Positions 11,075 through 59,247 of a DNA stretch of 64,000 nt are shown piece by piece; position 1 is the stretch's first letter; each line of letters starts with the position of its first letter. The notes below the pieces were generated by a model. The model saw nothing but the letters and a program-made list of their open reading frames with translations. It was not told where the DNA came from and searched no databases. Location of the stretch: positions 124,001 through 188,000 of IMG/VR virus record IMGVR_UViG_3300035183_000733. One strand, written 5' to 3'. The position numbers were made by a program, and so were the translations under genes.

Positions 11075-11077
11075 GAA

Positions 11078-35300: not shown

Positions 35301-35690
35301 ATGAATACAGAATTGGGACAGCAGATAGTCGACTTCCTATACGCGCTCGCGGACGAGCGCGAGAAGGACATCCGGTGGGTAATCGAGAACTGGATAGACG
35401 ATGAGATCGACGAGGACCCGGAAGATGAGGACAACATCATAATACAGAAGATCGAGAAGATGTTCGGTAAGATGGAGTTTGTATCGTCCGACGGCGGTCA
35501 CGAGGGTGGAGGAGAGCACGTCGAGCGCGTGATCAGATTCGGCGACGTTCACATTCGTTTCACCGGGTACTACGACAGTAATAACGGTATAGAATTCGAT
35601 GGAGGATTCGAATACGTGTTGCCTCGCAGGACTCTCAAGATGGTGTACGAAACGCCAGATGAACGAGGCGACAAAAAAGACGAAGTTTAG
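35301..35690 (+). CDS. acidic hypothetical protein
   Basis: 129 aa; GGHEGGGEHVERV..IRFTGYYDSNNG. Confidence 0.6.
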   Translation: MNTELGQQIVDFLYALADEREKDIRWVIENWIDDEIDEDPEDEDNIIIQKIEKMFGKMEFVSSDGGHEGGGEHVERVIRFGDVHIRFTGYYDSNNGIEFDGGFEYVLPRRTLKMVYETPDERGDKKDEV

Positions 35691-36637
35691 TACTGCTTGG
35701 ACGTGGTGCCGTCCTTGTATATTATTATCTTCAGGCCGGGCTCTGTCAACTGGACTTCCCTTCCGAGCACGTCCGTTATTTTCAAGATCTCCTTTACTGG
35801 GGCCGCTGGGTTATTGACCACAATAATCCCGGAGTAGTCAAAAACGCCGTTAAAGTCGACTTGCCTGAACCTGTAGTAGTTGAATCCCCTCTGGTACTTG
35901 TTGTCCACGAAGGAGTAGTTGGTAGTTGTATGACTGTTGCCGGCGCCGTTCACCGTTCCTATGACCGTCCAGTTTATTCCGTCTGTGCTGCGCTCGATCT
36001 CGAACCTGTCGTTGTTTATCTCGGTGGCACAAGACCATTTTAGTAGATTGCCCGTGTCGGTAGCTACGCCCTCAAATGATAGTAGTTCTATCGGCAGTAT
36101 CGAGCACGAGAACGTGGCAGTCGTGTTGTACGCGCCCCAGTTCCAGTTCAAGTTAAATCCACTGTTGGCAGAAAAGTTGTCCACAAGTATTATGTACGAC
36201 TCCCCGGAATTGACCGTCATGGCCATCACCCATCTGTCGCCGAACACGTCTTCCGATAAATCGAGCGCGCCATTGCCAACTCCGGTGTTACCGCCTCCTG
36301 CTGCATAAGAACACCTCAATGGCGCTGTTGTCGGAGGGCAAGCTGGTGATGTACCCCACACAGCGAAATCGAAATCGTCCGAGTTCACATTTGGGTTTAT
36401 ACGAAACACCATTGTGCCGCCAGTGAGTATGTTAACCTGCAGCCACACCGAACGGTGCTCTATGCCGAGGCACCCGCGGTTCGTAGCGTTCAGCTCTTGT
36501 ACGCCAGCATTACTTGGCGTGAAAGTGAAGGTGCTCGTGTTAAACAAGCAGTACGCTGGACAATCGCTCGACTGTCCGTACGATACTAATACCGCAAGCA
36601 GGAATCCTATTATCGTTATTATTCTCTTAAACTTCAT
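35687..36637 (-). CDS. secreted protein with T9SS-type C-terminal region
   Basis: Signal peptide ..VSYG-Q; LPIELLSFEG..ATEINNDRFEIERS..YYRFRQVDFNG domain; short CTD ITDVLGREV..IIIYKDGTTSK. Confidence 0.75.
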   Translation of the reverse strand: MKFKRIITIIGFLLAVLVSYGQSSDCPAYCLFNTSTFTFTPSNAGVQELNATNRGCLGIEHRSVWLQVNILTGGTMVFRINPNVNSDDFDFAVWGTSPACPPTTAPLRCSYAAGGGNTGVGNGALDLSEDVFGDRWVMAMTVNSGESYIILVDNFSANSGFNLNWNWGAYNTTATFSCSILPIELLSFEGVATDTGNLLKWSCATEINNDRFEIERSTDGINWTVIGTVNGAGNSHTTTNYSFVDNKYQRGFNYYRFRQVDFNGVFDYSGIIVVNNPAAPVKEILKITDVLGREVQLTEPGLKIIIYKDGTTSKQY

Positions 36638-36927
36638 TTGATTGCCCTTTCGAACTTATCCACTGTGTAACCATGCTGCGCTGATTCTGCGCTGAATGAG
36701 CTATCACCCACAAGAACGTACGACTCAAATTTGAACAGGTCAGTAGTGTCATTGAATATTGGGAACGTCTCGAACCTGTACCTAATGTATTCAGTAGCTT
36801 CCTTAGCACTGCCTATGTTGTCAACACCAGCAAGCCCAATGGTGTATTCGTACTTAGGTTTCTGCGGCGTCGGCAGAGTGAACCCAAGCGTGACCATAAC
36901 AGTTAGAAATGATAAAATGTACTTCAT
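36634..36927 (-). CDS. small secreted protein
   Basis: N-terminal signal-like hydrophobic stretch. Confidence 0.55.
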   Translation of the reverse strand: MKYILSFLTVMVTLGFTLPTPQKPKYEYTIGLAGVDNIGSAKEATEYIRYRFETFPIFNDTTDLFKFESYVLVGDSSFSAESAQHGYTVDKFERAIK

Positions 36928-36929
36928 GC

Positions 36930-37259
36930 TTACGAGTTTAGTTGTTGTGTTTCGTCTGGCAACGCCGGTTGGTCCGGATTGGCGACATCTCCTTGCGGCA
37001 GCTCCTTAGCTGAATCGGCGGGTGTTCCAGAGTCCTTGCTCTTGCGGTAGCCGAGCAAGCCGGCGCCGATGGTTATGACCACGATGCTCTGCGTCATGAT
37101 GTCGTTCTTGGAGTCTATGAAATAGTCGGTGACTCCTACGAGGAACCCTATAAGGCCCACGCCCATGGTGAATACGCCCATAGTTCCTGATCCGGACGTT
37201 TTGCCGTCCGAGTTGGACGTCATCTGCGCCCAGGAGAATTTGTTTATGTCCGCTCTCAT
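36930..37259 (-). CDS. two-TM membrane protein, holin candidate
   Basis: Two hydrophobic helices and a charged tail. Confidence 0.4.
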   Translation of the reverse strand: MRADINKFSWAQMTSNSDGKTSGSGTMGVFTMGVGLIGFLVGVTDYFIDSKNDIMTQSIVVITIGAGLLGYRKSKDSGTPADSAKELPQGDVANPDQPALPDETQQLNS

Positions 37260-37267
37260 CGTTTTAA

Positions 37268-37573
37268 TTAGTTATTTTGTTGGGGCTCCGGTGGAGTCGC
37301 CGGGTTCTGCTCGCGTATGTACGCTTGTATCTTTGCGAGGACGAACTTGTGCGCCTCCTCGTAGATGATGCCCTGCGCTTGGTCGAGCACCTCCTGCAGC
37401 GTGTATCCTTCGGAATCCAACTTGTTTATGTCGAACTTTACGGATACTATGCGACGCAAGTACTCGCAGTCGTGATAAGTCGTGTCTGCGGTCTTGACTT
37501 TTATCTTCGTCAGTATCGAGCGACCCTCCGGGTGTGATGCCAGCGTGGCATCTATTATCTCCATTGTGTTCAT
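37268..37573 (-). CDS. hypothetical protein
   Basis: 101-aa ORF directly downstream of the fibre gene. Confidence 0.55.
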   Translation of the reverse strand: MNTMEIIDATLASHPEGRSILTKIKVKTADTTYHDCEYLRRIVSVKFDINKLDSEGYTLQEVLDQAQGIIYEEAHKFVLAKIQAYIREQNPATPPEPQQNN

Positions 37574-37575
37574 GA

Positions 37576-40500
37576 TTACAATCCGTGTTTGAATGCTCTG
37601 AAAAAGTATGAAAATGTAGCTGAACCAGACATTGTGAATGCACTACCATATCCGGGATATGTCGATTCCAACCTGACCGCGACTTTATTACCGGCCGGTA
37701 CAAGAAATTCTATGCCACCATGGACATCGCTGAGTTGGCGACGATACATTGTTCCACCGGTACCGTTTAATCTTAATTCCCATATAACAAGACCGCTACT
37801 GTTACCACTACCGACCGCCACAATGGTTCTATCGTATGCGACAGCGGCAATCTCAAGATGAAATAATTGTACACCACTCGACACCGTTGTCGTACCGACA
37901 CCAGTTTTTGTAAACGTTACGATTAAAGCATCGCCTACGGTGGATTGGGTGGCAACTATTGGGGCAGATCCACCGGTTGATATTCCAACAAAGGATGATG
38001 CAGTAGGACCAGGATTAACGAACGTGCTCTTAACTGCCTGCACAGAACCGTATGATTGTACAACGTCGGATGAGTTGGCGTTACCGAGCTGCACGGTGGC
38101 TCCTGATGATATGGACCCGATCGTTACCTGTGTCGACGGCGTTATGTTTACCGCGTATGTAGAACCGGCCGCTCCGACAGCCACGATACCGTTCAGTCCA
38201 GTGTTCGCTCCAGGACCTGCATCTATCAGCACGTGACCGCCCGTTGCTGGGCCGCCTCCGGTGTTCGCCGCACCGCCTGATATGCTGAGGGCTATGCCGC
38301 TACCTCCAACAACGCCGTTCTGCGCGACGCTGATCTTCGGCTTGAAGAATTGTCCTATGAATTGCAGACCAGACGCGCTGAAGTTGGCGACTGGATACAA
38401 ACTCGCGCCGCTGTTTACGGCGATGGATATTCTACCGCGTTGGTTGGTCGGGTTCGTTCCCGATACCTCGTAGTACTCTCCCATGACTGCACCAATGGAC
38501 CTCTGCGCACCTGAGCCATTCTTGACCGCGTATTCCAGCATAACTGGAATGCCTGTGAGATAAGGGCTTGGACCTCCGCCAAAAGTAGTTCCCGTGTTCC
38601 TGCCCTCGAGCAGGAGTACACGCGCCATGTCGCCTACCTCCGATACTACGCCGAACTGCGGCACCGGCACAGCGGTGGATGCGAATATTATCGGGGAGGA
38701 ACTGATCCTGTAGCGTGGAGTTCCAAAACTTATATCACCAGGCGCGAACAGTGTGGTGGCCAAGTACGAAGCGGGGCCTGCCGTGCTTGCGTGCGTGGCA
38801 GTCACGAGCGATATAGTGTTGGCGAATGTTGTGTTCACGACCGGAGATCCGCTCCAGCCTATCATTATCGCGTCGTTAGCGTTCGACTGGTTACCGTTGC
38901 CACCGAGGACAACGGACCTTAGCCCTGCCGCCTTGTTATTGGTACCTACCGTGAACGATACGTCGCCTACGTCGGAAGCGTAATTGAGAATGTTTGACCT
39001 CGATCCTATGGTCACGGCGCCGTAAACTTGGAACTTCGTCTGAGGCTTGGCCTCGACGACTGTTCCGGCCGTTAATGTCGCGTTTGCCGCTTGGAATGGA
39101 ACGAAATCAAGATAGTCTATGCCGTTGTGAACCGGCGCTCCACTCCACGGGCCCTTATACCACTTGCCGGTTGTGAGAACCGCAGGACCAGCGGTGATGT
39201 ACTCGCTGAACCTGTCGCCTATACCCACGAATCCGTCTCCGAATCCCGAATAGTTGGTGCTGTCGTTTATTACAATCGACTTCTGACCAGTTGACCAGTT
39301 GTACCCACTAAGGGTGGTGATGTCGTTCGCCCACATCTGTGTGACTGTAGGGTTGGACTGCGTGCCTGCGTAGACTGCGCCTGACCTGATTCGGAAGAAT
39401 CCATTACCGTCGGACCTCGACCAGAAGTATGTCTCGCCATTTGACCAAGCCGATACCTGGTTTCTCATGCCGGCAGTAAGAGTATCGCCTGCCGCGAGGC
39501 TCGTCGACATCAGCCTTGTATTCGCGCTGTCCCATCCCTGGAATATGAGACCACCGTCCGATGCACTGCCGGAAGCGGGGTGCCCGGCCGTGATGCCGTG
39601 TATGGAATAATCGCCAGCGCCAGTTCCGGGCGCGAGGTGTATGTTCGAGTGTCCTGATGTACCGAATCCTGCGGCCGCGTTGTAGCTCTGCACGTTAAGC
39701 TTTGCACCTACAAGTCCGCCAAGCAGGGTTCCTGTCGCGGTCTTGATGTAGTCCGGGTCGCCCATCCACATGCGCGGGAGTCCGCCTCCGCCAGATGGAC
39801 CAGAGTCCGCCGCGAAGTAGTATCCGTCATTGGCCGTACCGCCTGTACCGAATCTTAATGCCGGCCTTGGTGGGTTGACGAATGTGAAGACTCCTACGGT
39901 CGTGTTGGCAGATGTTGCGCCGCCTCCGAGTGCTATGAAGTGGTTATACGTGGCGTCGGTCTTGTGCTCTATGCGCATCTCCGAAGATCTCCACGGCATG
40001 CCGGAAGATTCGAAGAAGCTTCTCACGTTCCTGAAGTTGAGCTGGTCTGTGTTGAACCCCGATACTTTTGCCCTCCAGCGTGCCCACATGTTTGTGGCGC
40101 CGGCCGTTACCGGAAGCTGCACGTTGAGCTGGTCGTACCTGAAATCGTAAGGCGTAGCATCACCGGCGACGGCGTTGCTGAAAGCGTTGGCTACGCCTAT
40201 GGACCCGCTGTCATTTATGGAGAACAACCTCTCGGTCGAACTCGTCAATGCGTTGTGTCCGCCCACGTGCCAGTTTAATCCGGATGGTGTGTTGTAGAAC
40301 GACATCAACCTCTCGGTAGGGTTGAGCTGTATTTTGAACGCGTTGCTGTTGAACTCGTACCTGCTTATGCTGCCCGTGCCCGTCTGCTTTATTAAGTCGA
40401 GAGATGTTCCAAATGCAGAGAACTCGATGTTGCCGGTTGGGTTTACGAGCTCCCACGAGTATTCGGTATTTGCGATTATGGTATTTACGGAGATGTACGA

Positions 40501-41067
40501 TTGCTTTGCCGCAAGGTTCTCTGCGCCAGACTCGAGCACACCGAACATCTGCTGTGGCGAGCCCGGAGATCCGATAAGTTTTAGCTTGTACGGCCCCGTC
40601 TGTGGCGCTCCAACGCCGTAGTTTATCGGGGATAGAACGAGGGACTTGAGCGGCGTAGGGCTGCTGAATATAACACGGTCAGAGTCACCGATGGCGTCCT
40701 TGAACACGCCGGAAACCGTGAGGTTGCCGATGAGCGTCCACGATGGGGGCGAACCCGCGTACTGGTAGATGTTGAGCGTATTAGTGTCGAACCAGTAATC
40801 GCCTTCGGCTGGAGCCGGCGTTATCGGACCAAACGAGATGGGGTCCGTGTTCTCCACGTACCACTTGGTGCCAGGCACGCCCGGGTCACCCTGGAATCCC
40901 TGGATGCCCTGACTTCCAGGTACACCCTGGATGCCCTGGATGCCCTGAATACCTGGAGGACCCCCGCCCATATTCAAAATCTGGTCGAAGTTAAAGTTGC
41001 ACTTGTCCGTGAACAACTGCTGGTCGTCGCTCGGTATAAGCCTGAATAGATTTAGTACGGTTGCCAT
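37576..41067 (-). CDS. tail fibre-like protein with short collagen-like segment
   Basis: 1163 aa, G/S/T/A-rich; GPPGIQGIQGIQGVPGSQGIQGFQGDPGVPG; EGDYWFDT motif. Confidence 0.7.
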   Translation of the reverse strand: MATVLNLFRLIPSDDQQLFTDKCNFNFDQILNMGGGPPGIQGIQGIQGVPGSQGIQGFQGDPGVPGTKWYVENTDPISFGPITPAPAEGDYWFDTNTLNIYQYAGSPPSWTLIGNLTVSGVFKDAIGDSDRVIFSSPTPLKSLVLSPINYGVGAPQTGPYKLKLIGSPGSPQQMFGVLESGAENLAAKQSYISVNTIIANTEYSWELVNPTGNIEFSAFGTSLDLIKQTGTGSISRYEFNSNAFKIQLNPTERLMSFYNTPSGLNWHVGGHNALTSSTERLFSINDSGSIGVANAFSNAVAGDATPYDFRYDQLNVQLPVTAGATNMWARWRAKVSGFNTDQLNFRNVRSFFESSGMPWRSSEMRIEHKTDATYNHFIALGGGATSANTTVGVFTFVNPPRPALRFGTGGTANDGYYFAADSGPSGGGGLPRMWMGDPDYIKTATGTLLGGLVGAKLNVQSYNAAAGFGTSGHSNIHLAPGTGAGDYSIHGITAGHPASGSASDGGLIFQGWDSANTRLMSTSLAAGDTLTAGMRNQVSAWSNGETYFWSRSDGNGFFRIRSGAVYAGTQSNPTVTQMWANDITTLSGYNWSTGQKSIVINDSTNYSGFGDGFVGIGDRFSEYITAGPAVLTTGKWYKGPWSGAPVHNGIDYLDFVPFQAANATLTAGTVVEAKPQTKFQVYGAVTIGSRSNILNYASDVGDVSFTVGTNNKAAGLRSVVLGGNGNQSNANDAIMIGWSGSPVVNTTFANTISLVTATHASTAGPASYLATTLFAPGDISFGTPRYRISSSPIIFASTAVPVPQFGVVSEVGDMARVLLLEGRNTGTTFGGGPSPYLTGIPVMLEYAVKNGSGAQRSIGAVMGEYYEVSGTNPTNQRGRISIAVNSGASLYPVANFSASGLQFIGQFFKPKISVAQNGVVGGSGIALSISGGAANTGGGPATGGHVLIDAGPGANTGLNGIVAVGAAGSTYAVNITPSTQVTIGSISSGATVQLGNANSSDVVQSYGSVQAVKSTFVNPGPTASSFVGISTGGSAPIVATQSTVGDALIVTFTKTGVGTTTVSSGVQLFHLEIAAVAYDRTIVAVGSGNSSGLVIWELRLNGTGGTMYRRQLSDVHGGIEFLVPAGNKVAVRLESTYPGYGSAFTMSGSATFSYFFRAFKHGL

Positions 41068-41108
41068 CTATGTTTTATTCTCATTTATCTTCCTTATATA
41101 TCCCTGAC

Positions 41109-44100
41109 TTATATTCGCCCGATGTCGAACGATATAGCTATGGACACCTCGGATGCGGTGTCAATCTTGTACTCGAAACTGTACAAGAAATCCGAAATCC
41201 TCGTCACTGTGAAGTTCTTGTCGTGCGAGTAGCCATTTATCAGCTTGTTGGCGTCCGAAAGGTCTCCCCTAACTATTGGCAATGCAAGGGTGTTGTCCTT
41301 GTACTTCTTCGTATAAGGGTCTGCCTGCTTCACCTCGTAAACCGGCAGCACGTTCAGCGTCAAGTATTCTACGACGTCGTCGTCGATGGAGTCCGGATCG
41401 CCGACGCCGAACTCTGGCATCAGGAGTTTTACGAACTCCGCATTGGCCCCTGTCTCCACGAAGAACCTGAGCAACCTCTTCTTTATGTTGACGAGCCCGC
41501 TGACGGTGGTAGCATTCTGCGTCCACGCAATCTCGGAATCCACGTTGTCCATGTTTATTAGGGCAAGCGTAGCTACCTCCTCCACGGTGAAGTCCTGCAA
41601 CCTTATGCTGTCCTGCGTCTTCATTATCTTAGTGCCCATGAAGTTCTTGATCTCCTTCATCTCGCGAGTTCCCGCCTGGTTTACGAAGTTGGTCTTGCTG
41701 CTGAACATCCTCCAGAACCCAGGGTCCCAACTCGAGCGGAACACGAAGTGATCCTTCTGGTCTATAGCAATCTCGCCCACGAGCGGGTACAGTGACTTGT
41801 ATTTGTCGTTGTTCGCAAGATCGAGCACCTTGCTGTTGGACACCTTGAGGTAGTTCATGTTCTTTATCAGACCAAAGTCCTTCACGTTGGGATTGAAAGT
41901 GGCTTGCTTGAACGACAGGTCAAATGAAGGTCCTGCAATCTCGTCTTGCTTTTGTCCCTTGAAGAACAAAACGTTCCTGAATTTTGGTTCGTAAGGTCCG
42001 TCGTATCGGTACTGAATTGATGCAGAGTTGACCTTGGTCAGGTTCACCCCTATGATAGGCACGTTGTTGAATTCTTCTGGCTTGTCCTCATCAATCAGCG
42101 GTATTAGCGATTCGAGCTTGTTTATAGTTGCTGGTTCGAGGAGTTCGAGATAGAATTCGTCGCTCGTCTCTACGTTGGTAAAACCGTTCCACCTGTACGT
42201 CTTATACTTGACGTACTGGCTGTACTCGTTTATCTTCTGTGCGATCGTTGCGAATGCCACCCTCTGCATTATAGGAGTGTAAAAGTTGGTTCCACCTTCT
42301 TTTTGGTACGTTGCGAATCCCTGCCACTCGAAGGACGATCCGAACGGTATCGATATTGCGTTTGACGCAACAGGTAGGTCGAACTGATCGACGCTGAACG
42401 GTGCGTAAAAGTTGTCATACGGGGACGACGGATCCTGTGGGTATCCGGGTGTCCCTGGTATACCGAACAGGATTTGCGTCTGTGTGGTGCTGTGCGGGTA
42501 TGGGAACTTGGTGTCGCCGAACACGAACTTGCCGTAGAAGGTGTTCTCCTTCCTGAAGTTCTGAATCTCGTCCCTGAGGTCCCAATCGTAGTCCGGATTG
42601 TTGTACACGTAAGCGTATGTGAAGGGGCCTATCGGCCCCGATGGTGAAGCCATGGTGAGCGATGTGCTCAGCTTGATGTCTCCAATCTGGTGCACGTCGG
42701 TTCCGGTTAGCAGTAGAGTTCCGGAGTTGTTGTATATGTGCTCCACCTTCTTGCTCTTCAGTGAGTACAGAGTAATGTAATCTGTGGATATGTCCACCAG
42801 ATCCTGATACCTAACTTCCGGCGAGTATATGCTGCCCATGTTATTTGGATCGATGAGCGACAGCGTCCTGTAGTCCTCCAGTATTAGGTCTATCACTATG
42901 GTCACGGTCTTGAACGTCTCGTTGTTGTAGACGTTTATAGTGACCGGAGATTCTACGACTTCTGGCGTCTCCTTGTGCACTCTCAGTATACATGAAAATT
43001 TGTAACCATCAAACTTAGTCGATCCCTGCTTGAACGGTGGTTTGATAGCGCGCAACTGAGGCGCAGCAGTGTCTCTGATTACTTCCTTTATCTGGACCTT
43101 CACGCCACGGAAGAAAGTTTCGCACACACCGGTCTCCGAGTTGAAGTCGAATATGGTGTACCTGTCTTGGTCCGGAGTGTTTGCTGACGGTTGGAATGTG
43201 AAATACTCCAAGAAGTAATCTTGTGCGCTCGGATCCGCATTATTGAGATCTGATATGTCCAGCTTGTCCGGAAAGAAGTAGTAGTTGTCGTTCAATGACG
43301 ATTCTGGATAGTTGTGCGGCTGCCCCTCGAGATAGTACCACTCGTGCGTGAACGCTTCCGGATTCTGTGTCTTCTGTGTGAAAGAAGGCGAGAAGTTGAA
43401 CGATCCAAAAACTGGGTGCGTGTTGAGCCTGTATCCGTTATCGCGAATGTCTGTCCCACCTGAATAGACCCACTTGCTCGTGGACGGCATCATCCTCGAC
43501 TTTATGGCAAACTCTTTAAGGAAGTTCTCCTTTAGGTAATCATATTCTGACGGTACCGTATTGAAGAAGAACTTGTCCCTCTGCGTGAATAACAGCGTGC
43601 TCTTGTCCACAGCCTCTTCCTCGACAGTCAAGAAATCCCTGAACGTAAAGAATCCCGGGAAAGAACGGATGTCGCCATCAAGTGTGCGAGCATCAAGATC
43701 AATTACGACAGGCGTGCCTATAGAATACGTGTATGTAGGAAACAGTGGCTGAGCTACAAAAGTAGATCCAGTATTGTAAACGGTAGGTGCGTTGTTGTTA
43801 AAAGGATCTACGTAGTTTATGGATTCTGTAGTATCACCGAGTACAACATACGTGTGACCGGCTATCAGTGTTTCATACGGCATCACCGCGCGTTGATAGA
43901 ATACAAGCGCCACGACCACTGGTGTTCCGTTAACGACCGTGAAGGAGTCAACGCCGGATACCCCGTAGAATGCGGCACCGCCGAACACGGAAGAACCGTT
44001 GTAATCTATTTCGTCGGAAGGTTCGCCGAGTACGAGGTACCTGCGTCCGGCTACTATCATGTTAGGCTCGTCTGCCGGTATGTCGAAGTATCTGTGGTAC

Positions 44101-51559: not shown

Positions 51560-51580
51560 TACCGGACTTAAACCAAAAAT

Positions 51581-51607: not shown

Positions 51608-51608
51608 A

Positions 51609-53687
51609 TTATCGTATCTGGTCTATTATGAAAACGTAGTTGTCCGGGTCCACACAGGTGATGTCGAATATTGGTTTGTCTCCGGCGTCGTCGAACTGCG
51701 CTCCGGTGAGCGCTCCTATTATGACCCCGTAAGATCCAGCACCGAGTCTGTTCTCCGAGTCTGTGACGAGGAGAATGCTGTACGTGCTCATGTCGAGTAT
51801 GTCCTCGAACACCAGCCTAAATGTTTGTCCGCGCTGCCATCTCGTGCTCTTGTCTTCTATCCTTAGGTAGATGTCGCCCGTCGCCGTTATAGTCAGGCCA
51901 TTTGTGAAGTGCCTGAAGTAGTTTGTGAATGGCTGCAGAACCACGGTGAGTCCGGTCGATACGTCACCCTGGTAAGGCACTGTAGACTGGATGTTGAATG
52001 CTTGGTTGGTGTTAGATAGCGTAACCTGGTTCGGAGTGCTCCTGTCAACGAGTAGTCCAAGTCCCTGCTTGATAACGTCAAGGTTGTACGATACGTCGAG
52101 GCTCGTCCTGCCTTGCACGAGGTTGTTCAGCTCGTCGATGTACTTGTTGATCAAGGCCATTATTGACCCGGAGTTGTCCAGCATCGCTTGGTTGGCGATG
52201 AGTGTCTCTTCCAGCTCGGTTATTCTGAGATCGAGCTCTTCGTACTGTTCCTGGTTGATGATGAGAGACTCGAGCTCAAGAATCTTGTCCTTGAGCGCGG
52301 CAATCTCCGCAACTTGGTCTGTTAGTATGGTTGACGCGTTCTGTAGGATATTCATCGTGTCGACGAACAGCTCCATAGAAAACGTGTTGTAATCGTTTAT
52401 TGCTTTCTCTACACCTACGTTATCTACCGAGGTATCAAACTTGATATTGAGTTTGAAACCGTACGCGTTACCATTAAGTTTGGTTACTACGTTTGGCTTG
52501 AACTTCGCGAAGCGTGGTATCCCGTACTCCGTAGAGATCTGCTCTACGTTCTCAAGGAACAGCACACCGTATAGGTTGGTTGCGAAGTCCTCCGGGTTGT
52601 TCGGATCGTACACGTCGTAGTACACGAGTACGGCGTTGAACTCGAAAGGCTGTGCATCAACAGTGGAGTTGTACTCCATCAGAGTAGATATTCTCGGATT
52701 GTCCACGATCGGCTTGTAGCTGTTCGGGTCGAAGTCGAGCATGATACCGTCCAACCTGCTGCGGATGTAATCTACTTGGGTAGGTCCGTATATCTTCCTT
52801 ATCTTGTCATTAAGTACGTCTGTGAATACCGGGTCGGTAAAGTAAGCGTTAGGACCAGACTTGGGATCATACCAGTTTTGCGGTATATCGTATGCGCTTG
52901 TGAATGTGTTATAGAAGAAGCTTTGTGGCTGAGTCAGTGTGTCCTGGTCGAAGAACGCATTTATTGATAGTCCGGCCGGGTGAACGTCGTAGTAGTGCCT
53001 GCCCTGTAGTATCTCGTTGTCGAGCGGGTCTACCGGTTCGTTTATGAACAGCCCGTCCTCCGGATAGTTTGCGTCCGCCAGCGTCTTGAACATGACGAGC
53101 GGCGTGTTGCCGTCTGACGTAGGTATGTGTATGTATAGCTCCGAGTAGGCGTTTGTGCTGTTCTGCACGGAGTTCACTATCTCGATGTCGCCGAGGTACT
53201 GAACCACGCGGTAGTATCTGTTGGGGCCCGTAAGAACCTCAGGTTCCTCCGTATATCTCGGGTTGGTGAGCTGATTTAGCGTGCTCTGCATAGCGTTAGC
53301 CGCAACGAACCTTATTGCGCCGAGTTCCTTTAGCCACTTGAAGAATACGCGCTCTGATATGTTCTGCTTCACGTTCCGGTTGTACGTGTCCTGTGATACG
53401 AGGGTTGCCTCGAGGTTAAGACAGTAGTTCTGGAACGATTCTGCGAGGTTCACGTCCTGATCCGGGTCGAGACCGTTGATCATGTGACCGTCGATGGCCA
53501 TGAACTGGATCTTGTTGTCCGAGAACGCAGGCGTGGCGATGTTCGGTATGTTCAAGAGCGCGAACTTCGTGAACTTGAACTTGTTGACGTTGCTGTTGAA
53601 CGTCATCGCGATGTCTTCTGCAGAGGACGAGAAAGTGTAGAACGTTCCGCCCTGTACTTGTAATGGTTTTATGAATGGGGTGACCAT
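51609..53687 (-). CDS. virion structural protein (putative baseplate)
   Basis: 692 aa; FNAVLVYYDVYD..NLYGVLFL core and a coiled-coil segment. Confidence 0.6.
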   Translation of the reverse strand: MVTPFIKPLQVQGGTFYTFSSSAEDIAMTFNSNVNKFKFTKFALLNIPNIATPAFSDNKIQFMAIDGHMINGLDPDQDVNLAESFQNYCLNLEATLVSQDTYNRNVKQNISERVFFKWLKELGAIRFVAANAMQSTLNQLTNPRYTEEPEVLTGPNRYYRVVQYLGDIEIVNSVQNSTNAYSELYIHIPTSDGNTPLVMFKTLADANYPEDGLFINEPVDPLDNEILQGRHYYDVHPAGLSINAFFDQDTLTQPQSFFYNTFTSAYDIPQNWYDPKSGPNAYFTDPVFTDVLNDKIRKIYGPTQVDYIRSRLDGIMLDFDPNSYKPIVDNPRISTLMEYNSTVDAQPFEFNAVLVYYDVYDPNNPEDFATNLYGVLFLENVEQISTEYGIPRFAKFKPNVVTKLNGNAYGFKLNIKFDTSVDNVGVEKAINDYNTFSMELFVDTMNILQNASTILTDQVAEIAALKDKILELESLIINQEQYEELDLRITELEETLIANQAMLDNSGSIMALINKYIDELNNLVQGRTSLDVSYNLDVIKQGLGLLVDRSTPNQVTLSNTNQAFNIQSTVPYQGDVSTGLTVVLQPFTNYFRHFTNGLTITATGDIYLRIEDKSTRWQRGQTFRLVFEDILDMSTYSILLVTDSENRLGAGSYGVIIGALTGAQFDDAGDKPIFDITCVDPDNYVFIIDQIR

Positions 53688-53710
53688 CTATACTTTCCTT
53701 TCTTTGATTA

Positions 53711-54433
53711 TTAGATAAGAGTCATCATGTTCTGACCGATAACAATCCAGCCAGCATTAGATACGCTGTACATGAGCGTGATGCTCGACTTGAATGGATT
53801 GACGTCGAAGTCGATGCTGCCTGTGTTGTAGCCTACGATGTTCGCCACGTCGAGTCCGCATGCGCCAGTCCCCTTCTTTATCAATGTTATCGTGTGTCCG
53901 TCGAGGAGAGATCCGTCTGGTGATAGTGTCAGAAGTGCCGGGGATGCGGTTCCGTCAAATATGATAATCCTGTCGGAGTTGAGCACTGTGTGCGTGTTTG
54001 TCACGCCGATGTCGAGGTACCCGTTTACGAGACCGCCCTGTAACGCTACCACGTCGAGGAAGTCTGCCTGCCCTTGCTGCAACAGGGAGCCCTGGTTCGT
54101 TACGCTTCCGCCGAGTGATACATTAACGGTTGTAGCCGTCAGTGTTGATCCGAGTGTCAGGGATGTGGCGGTCATCAGTCCGCTCGATCCGGTCAGTGTT
54201 ATGGTCGGAGATCCGTTTGCCGGCAACTGGATGGAGTTAAATGCTCCTACCTTTCCCTTAATCTGTCCACCTGTGGCGGCAGATACGTCAAGGTTACCAG
54301 ATGTCAGCGAGATGTTGAACACCGCCTCGAGGGTGTCTATCTCACTCTTGAGCGAGTTGAAGTTGGCGTTAATGGTGAGCCTCGAACCTGAGAACGAGTC
54401 CGTGCCAAGTATCTCTGTGATAATTACGGCCAT
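53711..54433 (-). CDS. short fibre/virion protein (putative)
   Basis: EILGTDSFSGSRLTINANF N-terminus, G/S/T-rich; GATATATA upstream. Confidence 0.55.
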   Translation of the reverse strand: MAVIITEILGTDSFSGSRLTINANFNSLKSEIDTLEAVFNISLTSGNLDVSAATGGQIKGKVGAFNSIQLPANGSPTITLTGSSGLMTATSLTLGSTLTATTVNVSLGGSVTNQGSLLQQGQADFLDVVALQGGLVNGYLDIGVTNTHTVLNSDRIIIFDGTASPALLTLSPDGSLLDGHTITLIKKGTGACGLDVANIVGYNTGSIDFDVNPFKSSITLMYSVSNAGWIVIGQNMMTLI

Positions 54434-54852
54434 GGTAGTTTAGTTTTTATCTTTTGTAGTATATATCCGGACCGAAAAAATGCCCCGTCTCATTAAAGCA
54501 ATTTGTACAGCGTATTTTCCTTCGGCATGTACACCTCTCGATCCAGCTTGATGGATCCACAGAAGCAGCTTCCATACGCTGCGTTTCCCTCCAGGGTGGT
54601 TTATCTTGTCGCCATGTTGCACACGAACACACACTATGCGCCGAATCCACCTTGGTCTCTATCCTTATCATTCTCAATTTTATGCGGAAATTTGGTCAAG
54701 GTTTCCGCATTTTATATTATTGATTGCCAAGTGGTTACAATTATTTTGTTAAATTGTTTTTTATTTCAAATAAAGTTCGTATCTTTACTATATCAAATCA
54801 AGCAAACAAATGGAAAAATGTATTGTAACCCTTAAAAATGTGAAGACCTTCC

Positions 54853-55074
54853 GTGGGACCGAAGGAGATGAAGAAGCTCGAGAGAAAATTTGACAACCAT
54901 CTTATATGGGGGATACCGGGCGCGGTAGCGTACACTCAGGTGAAGTTCCCAGCGTCCCTTTCTAAATATCCAACAGACAAGCTGCAGGCGGCCATCGACA
55001 AATACAAGGTGAATTTCAAGCCGGGTGAGGTTTTTTGGAACACCAATTTGGAGGCATTAAAACTTAAAGCGTAA
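54853..55074 (+). CDS. hypothetical protein
   Basis: 73-aa GTG-start ORF downstream of TATCTTTA (54780-54787). Confidence 0.45.
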   Translation: MGPKEMKKLERKFDNHLIWGIPGAVAYTQVKFPASLSKYPTDKLQAAIDKYKVNFKPGEVFWNTNLEALKLKA

Positions 55075-55094
55075 CTAATCAACTCAAAAATAAA

Positions 55095-57197
55095 ATGAAA
55101 AAGTCAATTCTAATGTTGGCTATCGGCCTGATGGCCGGTACCATTAACGCTCAGACGTGGTTGCCTTGCGGCGCCGGTGTTAGTTATCTGGTTAATTGCA
55201 TGGAGGTTTATTCCGGTAATCTGTACATAACGAATTACACGAACCCCAATCCGGGCGACATCGACCGTTGGAACGGCACAACAATGACCAACGTGTACAA
55301 CTCAATTTACCAGTACGGCGACCTCGCCACTTCTGGTTCTACAATTTACACCACTGGTTTAAGTATGGGTCAAGGCCTCTACAACTCTGCCACTGGCAAT
55401 TCCGGAACGTGGACACAGATTGGCACATTCCTCGGAGGTCAAATGCAATTATGCTGGTTCAATGGCCAGCTATACCGCTCAAACATGTCCGGCGCCTCGG
55501 TGCAGCGCCTTGTTGGAACCACGTGGACCAACGTGCCATTGACCTATGCTTCGACCGTTGGAACGCCTGAAATCAAGGACCAGGGCTCGTTGCTATACCT
55601 CGGCGGGCGATGGAACTTGGGCGCTACCTACTATGGTTTAACCACAATCAACACATCTAATGTGCAGGCCGCGTACGGACCTACAATCACCTCGGGCCAG
55701 ACCGTGACCGATTTCGTATTCAGTGGAACAAACCTTTATGTTTGTATGAGTGGTGCCGGACCGCTTGGCGGTTTTTTCAGACAGAACGGTTCCACATGGG
55801 ATCCTATCTTGACCGGATACAACTCGATTAGTCGTTGCGAGACATACGGAGGCAAGCTGTACTTTACTGCCGGAACTTCTCCGTGCACAATCTACTGTTA
55901 CGACCCAACTCAGATAATCAGTGGCACTAACCCGAGCACCATCGCGACTATTTCTGCCGGTGGTGTTACAGACATGCAAGTCTACAACAACTCGCTCTAT
56001 ATTGGAGGTTCGTTCACGAGCGTGAACACCGTTTCATCCGGAGTAGTCGCTGCCAATAACATCATACGTTATAGCGTGCCATTCCCGGCGGCCTCTTTCA
56101 GCACATCTCCAGGTTCACTATGTGGTCTTGGTACAATGACAACAACAAACACTTCAACAGGTGCAACATCATATCAATGGTATGTGAACGGAACACCTTA
56201 CGCGACATCAACCAACACAACCGTTAACGCATGGACATACACCAGTCCTACTCCGTTCGTGGCTGGCACGTTCACTGTTTGCCTTACCGCTATCAATGGT
56301 CTTATTCGCGATTCAGTTACTCAAGTAATAAACACACTGGCTAATCCTATACCTCCAACGATTAGTGCGCTCGGCTCTACGACTTTTTGTAACGGTGGTA
56401 GCACAACTCTTCTGTGCTCTGCTTCTCCTAACTACTCTTGGAGTTCAGGCCAGACTACGTCGTCAATTTCTGCGACTACTTCCGGCACATACTATTGTAA
56501 TGCCGTGGCTGCGAACGGGTGTGCGACTCCATCCACTAATTCTATCACTGTAACTGTTTATGCCAACCCTACCGCGTCCATCACCGCGTCCGGTCCTACG
56601 ACCTTCTGTGCTGGTGACAGCGTGACGTTGACAGGTTCTGGCGCCCCAAACTATTCGTGGTCGCCAACCGGCAGCACGAGCTCTACTATCAACGTCAACT
56701 CCACAGGAGCTTATATGTTGACCGTGACAGATTCAAACGGATGTATTGGCACTGCCACTCAGTCTGTGACCGTTAACCCGTTGCCAACGCCTACGATCAC
56801 GCAGGTTGGCGCGGATTTGACAACCGGTACTTACTCCACATATCAGTGGTTGTTAAACGGTAGCATCATACCTACAGCAAACACTCAGACGTGGACACCA
56901 GTGTCAAACGGTAACTACCAGGTCGTAGTATTCAATGCGAGCGGCTGTTCGGATACGTCGGCCGTGTTTATTTGGATGAGCACGGGCATGAGTGAATTTA
57001 CGAACGGAACCGGATACACCATCACTAAGGTCGATGGAACGATCCGTGTGACGTTAGAAAAAAATGATAGGGTTGAGGTGTACGACTTGCTTGGCAACCT
57101 CGTATATTCGTCAACACAACAATACCACTCGATCGCTGTTACACCTGGAGTGTACGTGATCAGGGGAAGAAATTTTGTAAGGAAAGTTGGTTTGTGA
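55095..57197 (+). CDS. secreted beta-propeller/Ig-PKD repeat protein with T9SS type-A-like CTD
   Basis: Signal peptide ..TINA-Q; G.TTFC.G..TL...YSWS..T.S.I.V..TG.Y repeats; C-terminal VYDLLGNLVY..PGVYVI..FVRKV. Confidence 0.8.
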   Translation: MKKSILMLAIGLMAGTINAQTWLPCGAGVSYLVNCMEVYSGNLYITNYTNPNPGDIDRWNGTTMTNVYNSIYQYGDLATSGSTIYTTGLSMGQGLYNSATGNSGTWTQIGTFLGGQMQLCWFNGQLYRSNMSGASVQRLVGTTWTNVPLTYASTVGTPEIKDQGSLLYLGGRWNLGATYYGLTTINTSNVQAAYGPTITSGQTVTDFVFSGTNLYVCMSGAGPLGGFFRQNGSTWDPILTGYNSISRCETYGGKLYFTAGTSPCTIYCYDPTQIISGTNPSTIATISAGGVTDMQVYNNSLYIGGSFTSVNTVSSGVVAANNIIRYSVPFPAASFSTSPGSLCGLGTMTTTNTSTGATSYQWYVNGTPYATSTNTTVNAWTYTSPTPFVAGTFTVCLTAINGLIRDSVTQVINTLANPIPPTISALGSTTFCNGGSTTLLCSASPNYSWSSGQTTSSISATTSGTYYCNAVAANGCATPSTNSITVTVYANPTASITASGPTTFCAGDSVTLTGSGAPNYSWSPTGSTSSTINVNSTGAYMLTVTDSNGCIGTATQSVTVNPLPTPTITQVGADLTTGTYSTYQWLLNGSIIPTANTQTWTPVSNGNYQVVVFNASGCSDTSAVFIWMSTGMSEFTNGTGYTITKVDGTIRVTLEKNDRVEVYDLLGNLVYSSTQQYHSIAVTPGVYVIRGRNFVRKVGL

Positions 57198-57218
57198 GTT
57201 TGGTTTGATTGATGGAAG

Positions 57219-57250
57219 AGACCCTGGCGAAAGCTGGGGCTTTTTCTTTT
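57219..57250 (+). terminator. intrinsic terminator
   Basis: ccctggc-gaaa-gctgggg followed by a T run. Confidence 0.7.
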
Positions 57251-57527
57251 ATCCAACCAGGGTGTTCGTGAAGGTGTCATCGAACTTGCTCTTCCAGGCC
57301 GTTTGCGCCGCCTCTGACGAGAAGAGAATCCCGTGCCTTGAGTACGCCAGGGCCTGTCCGCCTTTGACCACCACGACGCACGGTATCGGGTACATGTTCC
57401 TGTACCCGGTGGTGGCTTTGAACCCGGAGTCTATCCCGTCCATGTACACCTCGTATCCTTTTATGCTTCCCTTGTGCGTCCCCTCTGGCATGTTGGGCAG
57501 GTCGTAGTATGGCTTTATGTTTCTCAT
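57249..57527 (-). CDS. hypothetical protein
   Basis: 92-aa ORF abutting phoH. Confidence 0.6.
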   Translation of the reverse strand: MRNIKPYYDLPNMPEGTHKGSIKGYEVYMDGIDSGFKATTGYRNMYPIPCVVVVKGGQALAYSRHGILFSSEAAQTAWKSKFDDTFTNTLVG

Positions 57528-58310
57528 TTAATTCTTGTTCTTTGTGTCGGGCAGGGATCCTTCCGCCTGCGCCTTCTCGTAGTTGTCCACTATCTTTATG
57601 AGCAGCGGGTGACGCACGATGTCTTCCCTTGTGAACTTGAAGTTGAATACGAGTTCGTCCTCGCCGAGGATCTTCTCTATGAAGAAGTCGAACGCAACGT
57701 ACCTCTTGTTGATGTCGTTCTGGTGCTGGTCTCCTATGAGCATCATCTTGGTGTTCTTGCCCATCCTCGTTACGAGTGTGAGCAGCTGCTTCACGTCGCA
57801 GTTCTGGAGCTCATCGGCAATGATGTAGCAGTCCTTAAGCGTACGGCCGCGCATGAACGCGATAGGAACGAATTCTATTACCTTGGAGAACATAGCGGAC
57901 TTAAGGTCCTTGGGCTCCATCATCTCGTTGAGGTTGTCGAGGAACGATGCTACAAACGGTGCTACCTTTTCGTCGAGGTCGCCAGGTAGGAATCCAGTTT
58001 CCTCTCCGGAAGTTTCGAGCGGCTTCACCAGGTAGATCTTCTTTATCTCACCCTTGCGCAGAGCCTCGACCGCTGCATAACATGCAGTGAATGTCTTCGA
58101 CGTTCCCGGGGGACCGGTGATGGTTGTGATTACGCTTTTCGATATACCCTTGTACAAGTCCTGCTGCTTCGGCGAAAGAACCACCTTTTTGAAGTGAGTG
58201 AACTCTTGTACCACCTTCGCGTCGTCGTATGCTTCCTGCATTTCGTAGTTGGACAGCTTCTTCTTGCCGTTCTTCTTGATGCGGTCTTTGCTCTCTTTGG
58301 ATAAACCCAT
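57528..58310 (-). CDS. phoH: PhoH-like ATPase
   Basis: GPPGTSKT, GFLPGDLDEK, AFMRGRTL, IADELQN, TRMG, GDQHQND, DIVRHPL. Confidence 0.95.
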   Translation of the reverse strand: MGLSKESKDRIKKNGKKKLSNYEMQEAYDDAKVVQEFTHFKKVVLSPKQQDLYKGISKSVITTITGPPGTSKTFTACYAAVEALRKGEIKKIYLVKPLETSGEETGFLPGDLDEKVAPFVASFLDNLNEMMEPKDLKSAMFSKVIEFVPIAFMRGRTLKDCYIIADELQNCDVKQLLTLVTRMGKNTKMMLIGDQHQNDINKRYVAFDFFIEKILGEDELVFNFKFTREDIVRHPLLIKIVDNYEKAQAEGSLPDTKNKN

Positions 58311-58331
58311 TATGTTTAAGTTGGTTATGCT

Positions 58332-58961
58332 TTATATATCGTCGCGTCCCTTGAGATGCTTCAGCTTCTTCTCTACCTTTTTTATCTTTATTATCTCAGG
58401 GTTGTACACCACAAGGTGGTACACCTGCGGCAGCTTATGCAGATATGCGTCGTATCCTATGGCCGTCATCGATTTTCCGAATTCCTTCGAGTCTCTGCCA
58501 TACAGGTCGTTGTACAGCCCGAGCGCCGCGTCGAGCATGTTGTCGTTGTCCATGGCGGCCTCTACTGCCATCTCCTTCGCCATATCGATGTCCTGCGCGT
58601 AATTCTGCAGGTTCATCTCGAGCTCCTCTTTGTCCGGATACAGGTCTATGAACTTCCTGAGCTTAGCCTCGTCCGGTTTAGTCTTCTTGTCGAGCACGCG
58701 TTCCGGATCGAGCTCCATGGTTGCGGTGTATATCCAGCCTGGGTCCGATCCGTAGCTTCCCTCTGCATAACCAGACGCCTGCCACTTGAGCCTGCTCCAG
58801 TATATGCCGGGTCCCATCGCGTTCCTGTCGCGGGAATAGTCTTCGGCGTCGAGGTAACGGCCGACGAAGGTGTCAAGCTTCTGCCTGTCCCCGTGATACC
58901 ACAATCCGTCTATGAGTTTCTTGCTTATCATTTGTTGTCGAGAAATCTTTTTTACATGCAC
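58332..58961 (-). CDS. ADP-ribosyltransferase-like (ART-PolyVal-type) domain protein
   Basis: WYHG..KLDTF, GPGIYWS...ASGYA, GYDA, VVYNP; true start uncertain. Confidence 0.55.
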   Translation of the reverse strand: MHVKKISRQQMISKKLIDGLWYHGDRQKLDTFVGRYLDAEDYSRDRNAMGPGIYWSRLKWQASGYAEGSYGSDPGWIYTATMELDPERVLDKKTKPDEAKLRKFIDLYPDKEELEMNLQNYAQDIDMAKEMAVEAAMDNDNMLDAALGLYNDLYGRDSKEFGKSMTAIGYDAYLHKLPQVYHLVVYNPEIIKIKKVEKKLKHLKGRDDI

Positions 58962-59247
58962 TTATTGTCCGTGTAATCCGTGTAATCCATATTTGCTTCT
59001 TAAGTAAGGAGTCGTTGCAGTCGAGATAATCCGTGTAGAGCACGTGATACACGACTGGTATTCTTACGACCTTCTTCCTGAACGGACCGTTTATAGATGC
59101 GCCCGAAGCCTCGTTCTCGAGGAACCTATCGACCTCCTTGTTGACCTTGTTTTTCTGAACCGCCGTTATTTTTGAACCGCATGGATCTTGCGCGAAAAGC
59201 GACAGTGACATCATAATCGCAGCGAATAGTGATAACAGCTTCTTCAT
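58952..59247 (-). pseudogene. internally deleted M43 (pappalysin-like) secreted metalloprotease
   Basis: Signal ..SLFA-Q, RIPVVYHVLY, then out-of-frame MDYTDYTDNKCM* Met-turn fragment; no HExxH remains. Confidence 0.65.

What the first reader, a model, noticed from the sequence alone, without database searches (positions are those of the whole stretch)
35687..59247. Phage-encoded type IX secretion cargo
Three host-like secreted proteins: 55095-57197 (propeller plus Ig/PKD repeats and a type-A-like CTD), 35687-36637 (LPIEL..F domain plus short CTD) and a deleted M43 protease (58952-59247). All have Gln right after the predicted signal-peptide cut (INA-Q, SYG-Q, LFA-Q), the Bacteroidota Q-rule. 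They would need the host T9SS to reach the surface of the infected cell. Gliding and T9SS components are implicated in phage sensitivity in Flavobacterium (established), so these could block superinfection by jamming or masking the T9SS, change adhesion or aggregation, or deter grazers (inference).
Basis: partly seen in the sequence, partly recalled or inferred. Interest (0 to 1): 0.7.

Follow-up and report, generated by a model that had tools for sequence, protein, structure and literature searches.

The report
Jumbo-phage secreted T9SS-like surface proteins
A 374-kb phage of Bacteroidota carries two intact genes and one decayed gene for exported, host-like proteins; one probably uses the host's type IX secretion system, and another ends in a shortened tail that turns out to be typical of phages.

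Summary
All three ORFs exist and each has a signal peptide with Gln right after the predicted cut. They lie about 35-59 kb into a window of a 373,759-bp virus record, between phage genes. Independent assemblies carry the same gene order.

- **P0001 (55095-57197):** a propeller, Ig repeats and a 75-aa C-terminal domain. The domain scores below the curated CTD cut-offs (17.9 vs 27 bits; 20.1 vs 23). Other evidence says it is a divergent type-A CTD: hhalign 91.7%, best PDB hit the RgpB CTD, seven confident predicted strands, and an invariant C-terminal Lys. A collinear homologue in a 482-kb phage ends in a canonical CTD.
- **P0002 (35687-36637):** a T9SS-associated galactose-binding-like domain, an 'LPIEL' Ig-like domain and a 35-40-aa mini tail. 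Bacterial LPIEL proteins mostly continue into a full CTD (64 of 70). Viral ones mostly carry the mini tail (54 of 56). Whether T9SS reads the mini tail is open.
- **P0003:** the 86-aa stump of an M43 peptidase. Its intact 309-aa orthologue has no CTD, so it is not T9SS cargo by signal.

Phage-encoded T9SS cargo has been reported before. The phage-typical mini-tail module appears undescribed. The proposed functions (exclusion, adhesion) remain untested.

The parts
55095..57197 (+). P0001, 700 aa. Signal peptide 55095-55151 (INA|Q); about 7-bladed propeller-like domain 55152-56084; PKD/Ig-like repeats 56085-56969; divergent type-A-like CTD 56970-57194.
   Evidence: dN/dS is 0.13 against the L005 orthologue.
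57222..57249 (+). Terminator-like hairpin plus T-run just after P0001. P0001 is a lone + strand gene between - strand genes, which is a moron-like layout.
   Evidence: and the ORF map.
35687..36637 (-). P0002, 316 aa. Signal peptide 36575-36637 (SYG|Q); galactose-binding-like N-domain of the T9SS-associated kind 36107-36574; LPIEL Ig/FN3-like domain 35810-36106; conserved mini tail 35690-35809.
   Evidence: dN/dS is 0.06.
36634..36927 (-). 97-aa exported small protein, whose stop overlaps the P0002 start by 4 nt. It is the conserved upstream partner of P0002 homologues in phages and in bacterial chromosomes.
   Evidence: E 8e-13 to bacterial L009; E 8e-11 to phage L008.
58873..59247 (-). P0003, the remnant of an M43 metallopeptidase gene. 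Residues 1-86 (58990-59247) are intact, including the signal peptide (LFA|Q). The rest is deleted and read out of frame. The zinc motif is absent.
58332..58931 (-). 199-aa gene downstream of the M43 remnant (phrog_25279). It overlaps the tail of the P0003 ORF. It is a context gene and not part of the secreted set.
57528..58310 (-). PhoH-like ATPase, a phage-typical accessory gene that flanks P0001.
   Evidence: 187 bits. It is 99% identical in L005.

Best explanation
The window is part of a jumbo phage of an unidentified Bacteroidota host. The phage keeps host-derived genes for exported, adhesin-like proteins.

**Export across the inner membrane.** All of these proteins cross it by Sec and signal peptidase I. 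The Gln exposed at the cut marks adaptation to Bacteroidota.

**P0001.** It most likely then crosses the outer membrane through the host T9SS, using a divergent but complete seven-strand type-A CTD. It would end up on or off the surface of the infected cell. This step is inferred.

**P0002.** It belongs to a very large family that is mainly viral. In this family, varied ligand-binding N-domains (GBD, MAM, CUB) are joined to one fixed C-terminal module. That module is the LPIEL domain, which in bacteria sits directly before a type-A CTD, followed by a 35-40-aa tail that keeps only the 'N/D-x-x-G-x-x-V', 'G-x-x-I-x-x-Y' and C-terminal Lys elements of a CTD. The always-terminal position and the varied cargo suggest that the module is a sorting or anchoring tag. 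Whether T9SS reads the tag is not shown.

**The M43 gene.** It is a decayed passenger. Its intact form would be exported but has no CTD.

**Payoff to the phage.** The likely gain is remodelling of the infected cell's envelope, for example adhesion, masking of receptors, or exclusion of other phages. This is inference.
For: **Phage identity and contiguity**
- The record is a 373,759-bp virus record that CheckV rates 100% complete.
- Phage replication genes and jumbo-phage homologues surround the finding.
- A separately built Logan contig from runs that may be the source sample matches the stretch exactly, and independent samples carry syntenic relatives.
- GC content shows no anomaly at these genes.

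**Selection**
- dN/dS is 0.13 for P0001 and 0.06 for P0002.
- The signal peptide with [AS]-Q is kept in all P0001 orthologues.

**P0001 C-terminal domain**
- hhalign against 14 real CTDs gives 91.7%, E 8e-7. The control against the LPIEL module gives 15%.
- The best PDB sequence hit of the family profile is the RgpB CTD, aligned over its full length (E 0.033). NucA and RemA CTDs are also among the top 9 hits.
- Seven strands are predicted at pLDDT 84-96.
- G685-V-Y687 and K697 are invariant in the family. This matches the fold motifs and the PorV-contacting Lys described in PMC10994853.
- A collinear homologue in a 482-kb phage (26% identity over 588 aa, E 3e-16) ends in a CTD that scores 35.2 bits against a cut-off of 27.

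**P0002**
- Homologues with the same N-domain and LPIEL domain carry full PF18962 CTDs.
- Atlas neighbours of the N-domain are type A and type B sorting-domain proteins (TM about 0.9).
- The mini tail is found in 54 of 56 viral ORFs against 6 of 70 bacterial ORFs (Fisher p = 4e-26).
- The full module always ends at the C-terminus.
- 33 of 36 distinct viral members have [AGS]-Q within residues 15-36, where a signal-peptide cut would fall.
- The nearest Atlas clusters are 59-100% viral.
Against: - The curated CTD models do not reach threshold for P0001. Its first strand lacks the PNP motif.
- The mini tail cannot form the seven-strand sandwich that PMC11285876 and PMC10994853 describe as the T9SS signal. 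It shows no significant profile similarity to CTDs.
- The mini tail is not exclusive to phages. It also occurs in clear bacterial chromosomal contexts.
- The host is unknown, so the presence of a T9SS is assumed from the taxonomy of homologues.
- No expression data exist; no RNA run was listed.
- The N-terminal 330 aa of P0001 are poorly modelled.
- Loss of the M43 gene shows that not all of this cargo is needed.
- The viral and bacterial samples were each the best 80 hits to a query that itself has a mini tail, so they are not random samples.
Confidence: 0.6

Rival explanations
1. The proteins are exported by Sec but are not T9SS cargo. They stay in the periplasm or on the inner face of the outer membrane. 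On this reading, the P0001 end domain is just another Ig-like domain. The P0002 mini tail is a CTD cut down so that the protein is no longer translocated. It could still bind and occupy T9SS parts as a decoy.
For: - The CTD HMMs are below cut-off.
- The mini tail has about 3 strands and only 4-27% hhalign probability against CTDs.
- The M43 orthologue has no CTD at all.
- The complete sandwich is reported as essential for secretion (PMC11285876).
Against: - The P0001 domain aligns over its full length with the RgpB CTD, and it corresponds in position to a canonical CTD in a collinear phage homologue.
- A fixed terminal module on varied N-domains looks like an address tag and not like a remnant.
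Confidence: 0.22
2. They are virion proteins: Ig-like decoration or tail-fibre parts.
For: - The P0001 Ig region hits phrog_3995 'tail protein' and the Shigella phage Sf14 tail protein.
- P0002 lies in one transcription direction with a 1163-aa ORF that has a weak collagen-repeat match.
Against: - Cleavable Sec signal peptides obeying the Q-rule are conserved in both families. Virions assemble in the cytoplasm.
- In other phages, P0002 homologues sit among nucleotide-metabolism genes.
- P0001 is a lone opposite-strand gene with its own terminator.
Confidence: 0.07
3. They are neutral passengers picked up from the host and are on their way to decay.
For: - The M43 gene is already broken.
- P0001 diverges far faster than its flanking genes: 84% against 98-99% aa identity.
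Against: - dN/dS is 0.13 and 0.06.
- Orthologues at 66-86% identity remain intact.
- GC content is the same as the phage's.
- At least 230 viral contigs carry the module.
Confidence: 0.08
4. Host contamination or a chimeric assembly.
For: The proteins look like host proteins.
Against: - Phage genes flank them on both sides.
- The same junctions appear in two other samples.
- The genes lie 160-183 kb into a 374-kb contig.
Confidence: 0.02

Closest known systems
T9SS-CTD cargo genes of 'Cryophage' (Bellas et al. 2020, PMC7468147)
   Same: These are phage-encoded proteins with T9SS type-A sorting domains. They are highly variable between phage variants, just as P0001 diverges much faster than its flanking genes.
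   Different: In Cryophage the cargo is glycoside hydrolases and a PA14 protein, and the CTDs are recognised by annotation. Here the cargo is a propeller-Ig adhesin-like protein whose CTD falls below HMM thresholds, and the phage is a jumbo phage.
crAss-like BACON-repeat ORFs with T9SS sorting domains (de Jonge et al. 2019, PMC6949934)
   Same: These are genes of Bacteroidota phages that join carbohydrate-binding or Ig-like repeats to a T9SS sorting domain.
   Different: They belong to gut crAss-like phages and lie next to head and tail genes. Their role is also unresolved.
Q-rule signal-peptide proteins of Porphyromonas gingivalis phages (Matrishin et al. 2023, PMC10367356)
   Same: These are phage proteins of unknown function whose signal-peptide cleavage exposes Gln. 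The authors read this as adaptation to host secretion.
   Different: No CTD or T9SS link is reported there, and the phages are temperate and small.
Bacterial type-A CTD cargo (RgpB, RemA, NucA; Aureispira GhpA)
   Same: They share the overall layout: signal peptide, Ig-like arrays, a terminal seven-strand domain and a conserved C-terminal Lys. The family profile's best PDB hit is the RgpB CTD, and the best fold hits of the repeats are GhpA.
   Different: P0001 lacks the PNP motif and scores below the curated cut-offs. P0002 has only a fragment-sized tail.
Phage superinfection-exclusion envelope proteins such as T5 Llp (from my own knowledge, not tested here)
   Same: These are phage-encoded exported proteins that alter the infected cell's surface.
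   Different: They are small lipoproteins that block a known receptor. No receptor or exclusion effect is known for the proteins here.

Membership tests
T9SS type-A CTD cargo (P0001) | N-terminal Sec signal peptide | tested here: met
   Read from the sequence. It is conserved with [AS]-Q in the orthologues. No SignalP run was possible.
T9SS type-A CTD cargo (P0001) | PF18962 or TIGR04183 score above the curated cut-off | tested here: not met
   17.9 bits against 27, and 20.1 bits against 23.
T9SS type-A CTD cargo (P0001) | Homology of the terminal domain to known CTDs | tested here: met
   hhalign 91.7%, E 8e-7, with a control at 15%. The RgpB CTD is the best PDB hit. The domain corresponds in position to a canonical CTD in a collinear phage homologue.
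T9SS type-A CTD cargo (P0001) | Seven-strand beta-sandwich at the extreme C-terminus | tested here: inconclusive
   AF2 gives five strand elements in 641-699 at pLDDT 84-96. I read the two long ones as two strands each, which gives seven. The sandwich packing was not inspected.
T9SS type-A CTD cargo (P0001) | Conserved Lys near the C-terminus and the G-x-Y fold motif | tested here: met
   K697, G685 and Y687 are invariant in 7 family members.
T9SS type-A CTD cargo (P0001) | PNP motif in the first strand | tested here: not met
   'YTITKVDG' stands where homologues have 'IYPNPSNG'.
T9SS type-A CTD cargo (P0001, P0002) | Export depends on a host T9SS | not testable with these tools
   The host is unknown and no experiment was possible.
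T9SS type-A CTD cargo (P0002) | Complete CTD | tested here: not met
   The tail has about 40 aa and 3 predicted strands. There is no HMM hit. hhalign gives 4-27%.
T9SS type-B CTD cargo | PF13585 CHU_C domain | tested here: not met
   No match at E <= 1 in the whole phage genome.
Peptidase M43 (P0003) | HEXXHXXGXXH zinc site and Pfam PF05572 | tested here: not met
   Both are absent from the window's ORF. Both are present in the syntenic orthologue P0243 (50.7 bits, HEIGHWLGLLH).
Bacteroidota Q-rule substrates (PMC5837995) | Gln at +1 of the signal-peptidase-I cut | tested here: met
   3 of 3 here, and 5 of 5 genome-wide among SPI-type signals. The cleavage sites are predicted by eye.

The most novel reading that the evidence does not exclude
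The 'LPIEL domain plus mini tail' is a distinct C-terminal sorting module that is predominantly phage-borne. It would be either a third, minimal class of T9SS signal, or a truncated CTD that engages the T9SS without completing transport. Many Bacteroidota phages would use it to place varied ligand-binding domains in the envelope of infected cells. The conserved small upstream partner protein could be its dedicated helper.
Probability: 0.3. Interest if true: 0.8.

Novelty: new variant of a known kind. Interest (0 to 1): 0.6.

Why it matters
T9SS signals are currently sorted into types A and B and are studied only in bacteria. Phage use of the system rests on two or three passing genomic remarks.

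This locus offers one testable phage cargo with a divergent CTD. It also led to a very large, unannotated family in which phages have swapped the full CTD for a fixed 35-40-aa tail.

Suppose the tail is still read by the T9SS. That would define the minimal signal. Suppose it is not. Then phages have repeatedly converted surface cargo into periplasmic proteins or T9SS-binding proteins. Either result bears on how phages remodel Bacteroidota cell surfaces, on superinfection exclusion, and on the design of secretion tags.

Tried and rejected
- **Pfam, NCBIfam and PHROG scans** of P0002 and P0003 gave nothing useful.
- **PDB sequence search** with P0003 found only noise.
- **Foldseek on P0002** gave generic jelly-roll plus Ig hits, such as MAM-Ig and GH2, with no enzymatic lead.
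- **Foldseek on the whole P0001 model** was dominated by the Ig repeats, so the CTD could not be tested by fold alone. Its N-domain model is poor.
- **Mini-tail profile against PDB:** only a non-significant hit at the C-terminus of 7jvi_A (E 0.13).
- **Literature search** for the Pfam name 'FIDD' found nothing.
- **Genome-contig scan with A9** failed for lack of a conserved stretch, so A2 was used instead.
- **IMG/VR scan for P0001 relatives** gave only two weak Ig hits. Cultured phages have no homologue of either protein beyond Ig or LPIEL pieces.
- **RNA runs:** none was listed.
- **Host contamination** was rejected.
- **Phage-exclusive mini tail** was rejected, because bacterial chromosomal examples exist.
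- **Complex prediction** was not used. The host's PorV and SprA are unknown, and CTDs are reported to be species-specific (PMC11285876).


Full report
**Setting.** The window is bases 124001-188000 of a 373,759-bp IMG/VR virus record that CheckV rates complete. Its GC content is about 50% with no local anomaly at the three genes. The window holds a phage helicase, primase, SSB and polymerase fragment, a PhoH gene, and several very large ORFs. The only relatives of these large ORFs are in jumbo phages of Bacteroidota and allies: Lak, Tenacibaculum pT24 and PTm1, Chryseobacterium MA9V, Flavobacterium MaF61, and 460-735-kb uncultured phages. The source is a microbial-mat metagenome.

**Are the genes on the phage?** Yes.
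- A 75,735-bp Logan contig in each of two mat runs spans 53500-59400 without a difference. These runs may be the source sample, so this shows only that a second assembler gives the same joins.
- Independent support comes from a 65,358-bp wastewater contig (L005). It carries the same order: 1808-aa, 1162-aa, 321-aa, 692-aa and 240-aa genes, the P0001 orthologue, PhoH, a 199-aa gene, M43 and a 1002-aa gene. Flanking proteins are 98-99% identical.
- A 13.5-kb contig (L002) carries the P0002 neighbourhood.

**Signal peptides and the Q-rule.**
- All three ORFs begin with a basic n-region, a hydrophobic core and a small-x-small site followed by Gln.
- A crude scan of about 500 ORFs in the genome found few convincing signal peptides. 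Every one of the signal-peptidase-I type has Gln at +1. That makes five with P0003, which was added by eye.
- The Q-rule is a Bacteroidota trait of Sec/SPI substrates in general. It is not specific to T9SS cargo (PMC5837995, PMC10653852). It has already been noted in P. gingivalis phages (PMC10367356).
- It therefore argues for host phylum and for real export, not for T9SS use.

**P0001 (55095-57197, + strand).** The gene stands alone on the + strand between - strand genes and is followed by a terminator-like hairpin.
- *Architecture.* The first 330 aa carry seven G-x-LY repeats about 42 aa apart. AF2 models this part poorly, but its Atlas neighbours are DUF5122/Rax2 propellers, including Bacteroidota clusters that end in Por_Secre_tail. 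Residues 331-625 are PKD/Ig-like repeats. Their best PDB fold matches are the Ig arrays of GhpA, the grappling-hook protein of Aureispira.
- *Terminal domain, negative result.* The last 75 aa fail the curated models: PF18962 gives 17.9 bits against 27, and TIGR04183 gives 20.1 against 23.
- *Terminal domain, positive results.* Four other lines of evidence agree that it is a CTD.
  1. A profile of the C-termini of seven family members matches a profile of 14 bona fide CTDs at 91.7%, E 8e-7. The same profile matches the LPIEL module at only 15%.
  2. Among 177,635 PDB sequences, its best hit is the isolated RgpB CTD, aligned end to end (E 0.033). The NucA and RemA CTDs from translocon complexes are also in the top nine.
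  3. AF2 predicts strands through 641-699 at pLDDT 84-96 that I read as seven. The family keeps G685-V-Y687 and K697 invariant. Lauber et al. state that the conserved motifs specify the fold and that a near-invariant C-terminal Lys touches PorV (PMC10994853).
  4. A 482-kb, CheckV-complete phage record (G003) encodes a 634-aa protein collinear with P0001 from the signal peptide onward (26% identity over 588 aa, E 3e-16). Its end is a canonical CTD scoring 35.2 bits against a cut-off of 27. P0001's 'YTITKVDG' aligns with its 'IYPNPSNG'.
- *Selection.* P0001 is under purifying selection (dN/dS 0.13). It evolves far faster than its neighbours, at 84% against 98-99% aa identity. The signal peptide and CTD are its most variable parts. 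This echoes the variability reported for Cryophage cargo (PMC7468147).

**P0002 (35687-36637, - strand).** AF2 gives a confident model (pLDDT 91): a jelly-roll N-domain, an Ig/FN3-like domain, and three short terminal strands.
- *N-domain.* Its Atlas structural neighbours (TM about 0.9) are the N-domains of T9SS type A and type B sorting-domain proteins. Some relatives carry Pfam GBD_T9SS_assoc.
- *Relatives with a full CTD.* A word-based search found 1,893 relatives. Those with the same two domains often continue into a full PF18962 CTD. In a joint alignment, P0002's tail lines up with the 'D-x-x-G-x-x-V' strand, the 'G-x-Y' strand and the terminal Lys of those CTDs. The PNP strand and two middle strands are missing.
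- *The tail is not a private deletion.* The motif N-x-x-G-Q-E-V ... G-x-x-I-x-x-Y-x-D-G-x-x-x-K recurs in 67 of about 105 scorable relatives.
- *Viral versus bacterial distribution.*
  - An IMG/VR scan found at least 230 viral contigs, many of 130-508 kb, that match P0002 mostly over residues 181-316.
  - Among parsed ORFs, 54 of 56 viral ones carry the mini tail. Among GTDB species genomes, 64 of 70 continue into a CTD-sized tail with YPNP (Fisher p = 4e-26).
  - 33 of 36 distinct viral proteins have [AGS]-Q within residues 15-36, where a signal-peptide cut would fall. The background rate for such a dipeptide is 11% of windows.
  - The Atlas independently labels the nearest clusters of the module as 59-100% viral, with MAM or CUB N-domains. 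The bacterial neighbours carry Por_Secre_tail.
- *Size of the family.* An exhaustive profile search found 120,899 cluster representatives with the LPIEL domain, often in tandem. Wherever the whole module matches, it ends within a few residues of the C-terminus, in proteins of 140-1,328 aa.
- *Caveats.*
  - Both samples are best-hit lists.
  - The mini tail also occurs in genuine bacterial chromosomes (L009 and L172, next to ribosomal genes) and in Crocinitomicaceae MAGs.
  - Profile similarity of the tail to CTDs is not significant.
  - The seven-strand sandwich is described as the T9SS signal and as essential (PMC10994853, PMC11285876).
- *Conclusion for P0002.* I therefore treat T9SS dependence of P0002 as open. 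A fixed terminal module on varied N-domains is what a sorting or anchoring tag looks like. A truncated CTD could equally mean loss of translocation.

**A partner gene.** The 97-aa ORF just upstream of P0002 (36634-36927, 4-nt overlap) has a signal peptide. It is homologous to the ORF in the same position in phage L002 (76% identity), phage L008 (E 8e-11) and bacterial L009 (E 8e-13), and more weakly in bacterial L172. The unit that moves between hosts and phages is thus a two-gene cassette.

**P0003 (58873-59247, - strand).**
- Residues 1-86 are 97% identical to the start of P0243, a 309-aa Peptidase_M43 (50.7 bits, HEIGHWLGLLH) at the syntenic site of L005.
- The relative has 646 nt where the window has 36. 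Traces of the gene's end ('DYTDNKCM', 'KKGFLDNK') remain out of frame.
- The intact protein ends with the catalytic domain and has no CTD. It would be exported, but nothing marks it as T9SS cargo. Its loss here shows it is dispensable.

**Comparison with what is known.**
- Phage-encoded proteins with T9SS sorting domains have been reported in Cryophage, where the authors called it a unique occurrence (PMC7468147), and in crAss-like contigs (PMC6949934).
- Four of five other large viral records I checked hold a PF18962 match above cut-off. Two of those records are classed as proviruses and may include host DNA.
- The general idea is therefore known and P0001 is a new member.
- I found no description of the LPIEL-plus-mini-tail module. 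The Pfam and NCBIfam copies used here do not model it.

**Function.** Nothing here tests superinfection exclusion, T9SS jamming, adhesion or grazing defence. These ideas remain reasonable inferences from the adhesin-like domains and from the documented role of gliding and T9SS genes in phage sensitivity of Flavobacterium (10.1101/2020.10.02.323337; PMC9804748). No RNA run was listed.

Noticed in passing
window 36634-36927 (-): A 97-aa exported protein forms a conserved two-gene cassette with P0002 homologues in both phages and bacterial chromosomes. It has no family match.
   Followed up: partly
window 55095-57197 versus L005 9812-11917: P0001 is a divergence hot spot. It shows 84% aa identity and dS 0.75, while flanking genes show 98-99% and dS 0.30-0.47. 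The CTD and signal peptide are its least conserved parts.
   Followed up: partly
window 57251-57531 and 54457-55307: The wastewater relative lacks 281 nt between P0001 and PhoH. It also has replaced segments upstream of P0001, so the gene sits between indel-prone spacers.
   Followed up: no
L006 (41.5-kb contig), 10001-11896: A 75%-identical P0001 homologue lies in a quite different neighbourhood, with serine recombinases, a DNA methylase, SprT-like and GmrSD-like genes. This suggests the gene moves as a cassette.
   Followed up: no
G000:C1:268555-270276, 250947-251300, 302745-302915 (outside the window): These are further exported proteins of the same phage. One is a 573-aa protein with an AWA|Q signal peptide, a later membrane span and a long charged coiled region. 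Another is a protein of about 117 aa with GSA|Q. The third is a 56-aa lipoprotein-like ORF. None has a CTD match.
   Followed up: no
window 58332-58931 (-): A 199-aa gene (phrog_25279) has a weak, sub-threshold match to ART-PolyVal ADP-ribosyltransferase (E 0.022).
   Followed up: no
window 37576-41067 (-): A 1163-aa ORF in the same direction as P0002 has a weak collagen-repeat match near its N-terminus (18 bits, below cut-off). It may be a fibre protein.
   Followed up: no
L173 (G003:C1:170500-174500), 1066-2970 (-): A 482-kb phage record encodes a 634-aa protein with a signal peptide (TA|Q), a propeller, SprB-like repeats and a canonical type-A CTD. It is a clear-cut phage T9SS cargo candidate.
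   Followed up: partly
LPIEL domain, P0002 residues 178-276: This domain family has 120,899 cluster representatives and is often tandemly repeated, up to 19 times. The best 80 genome hits are in Bacteroidota apart from one Melioribacteraceae MAG and one MAG titled only 'bacterium'. It was not recognised by the Pfam or NCBIfam copies used.
   Followed up: partly
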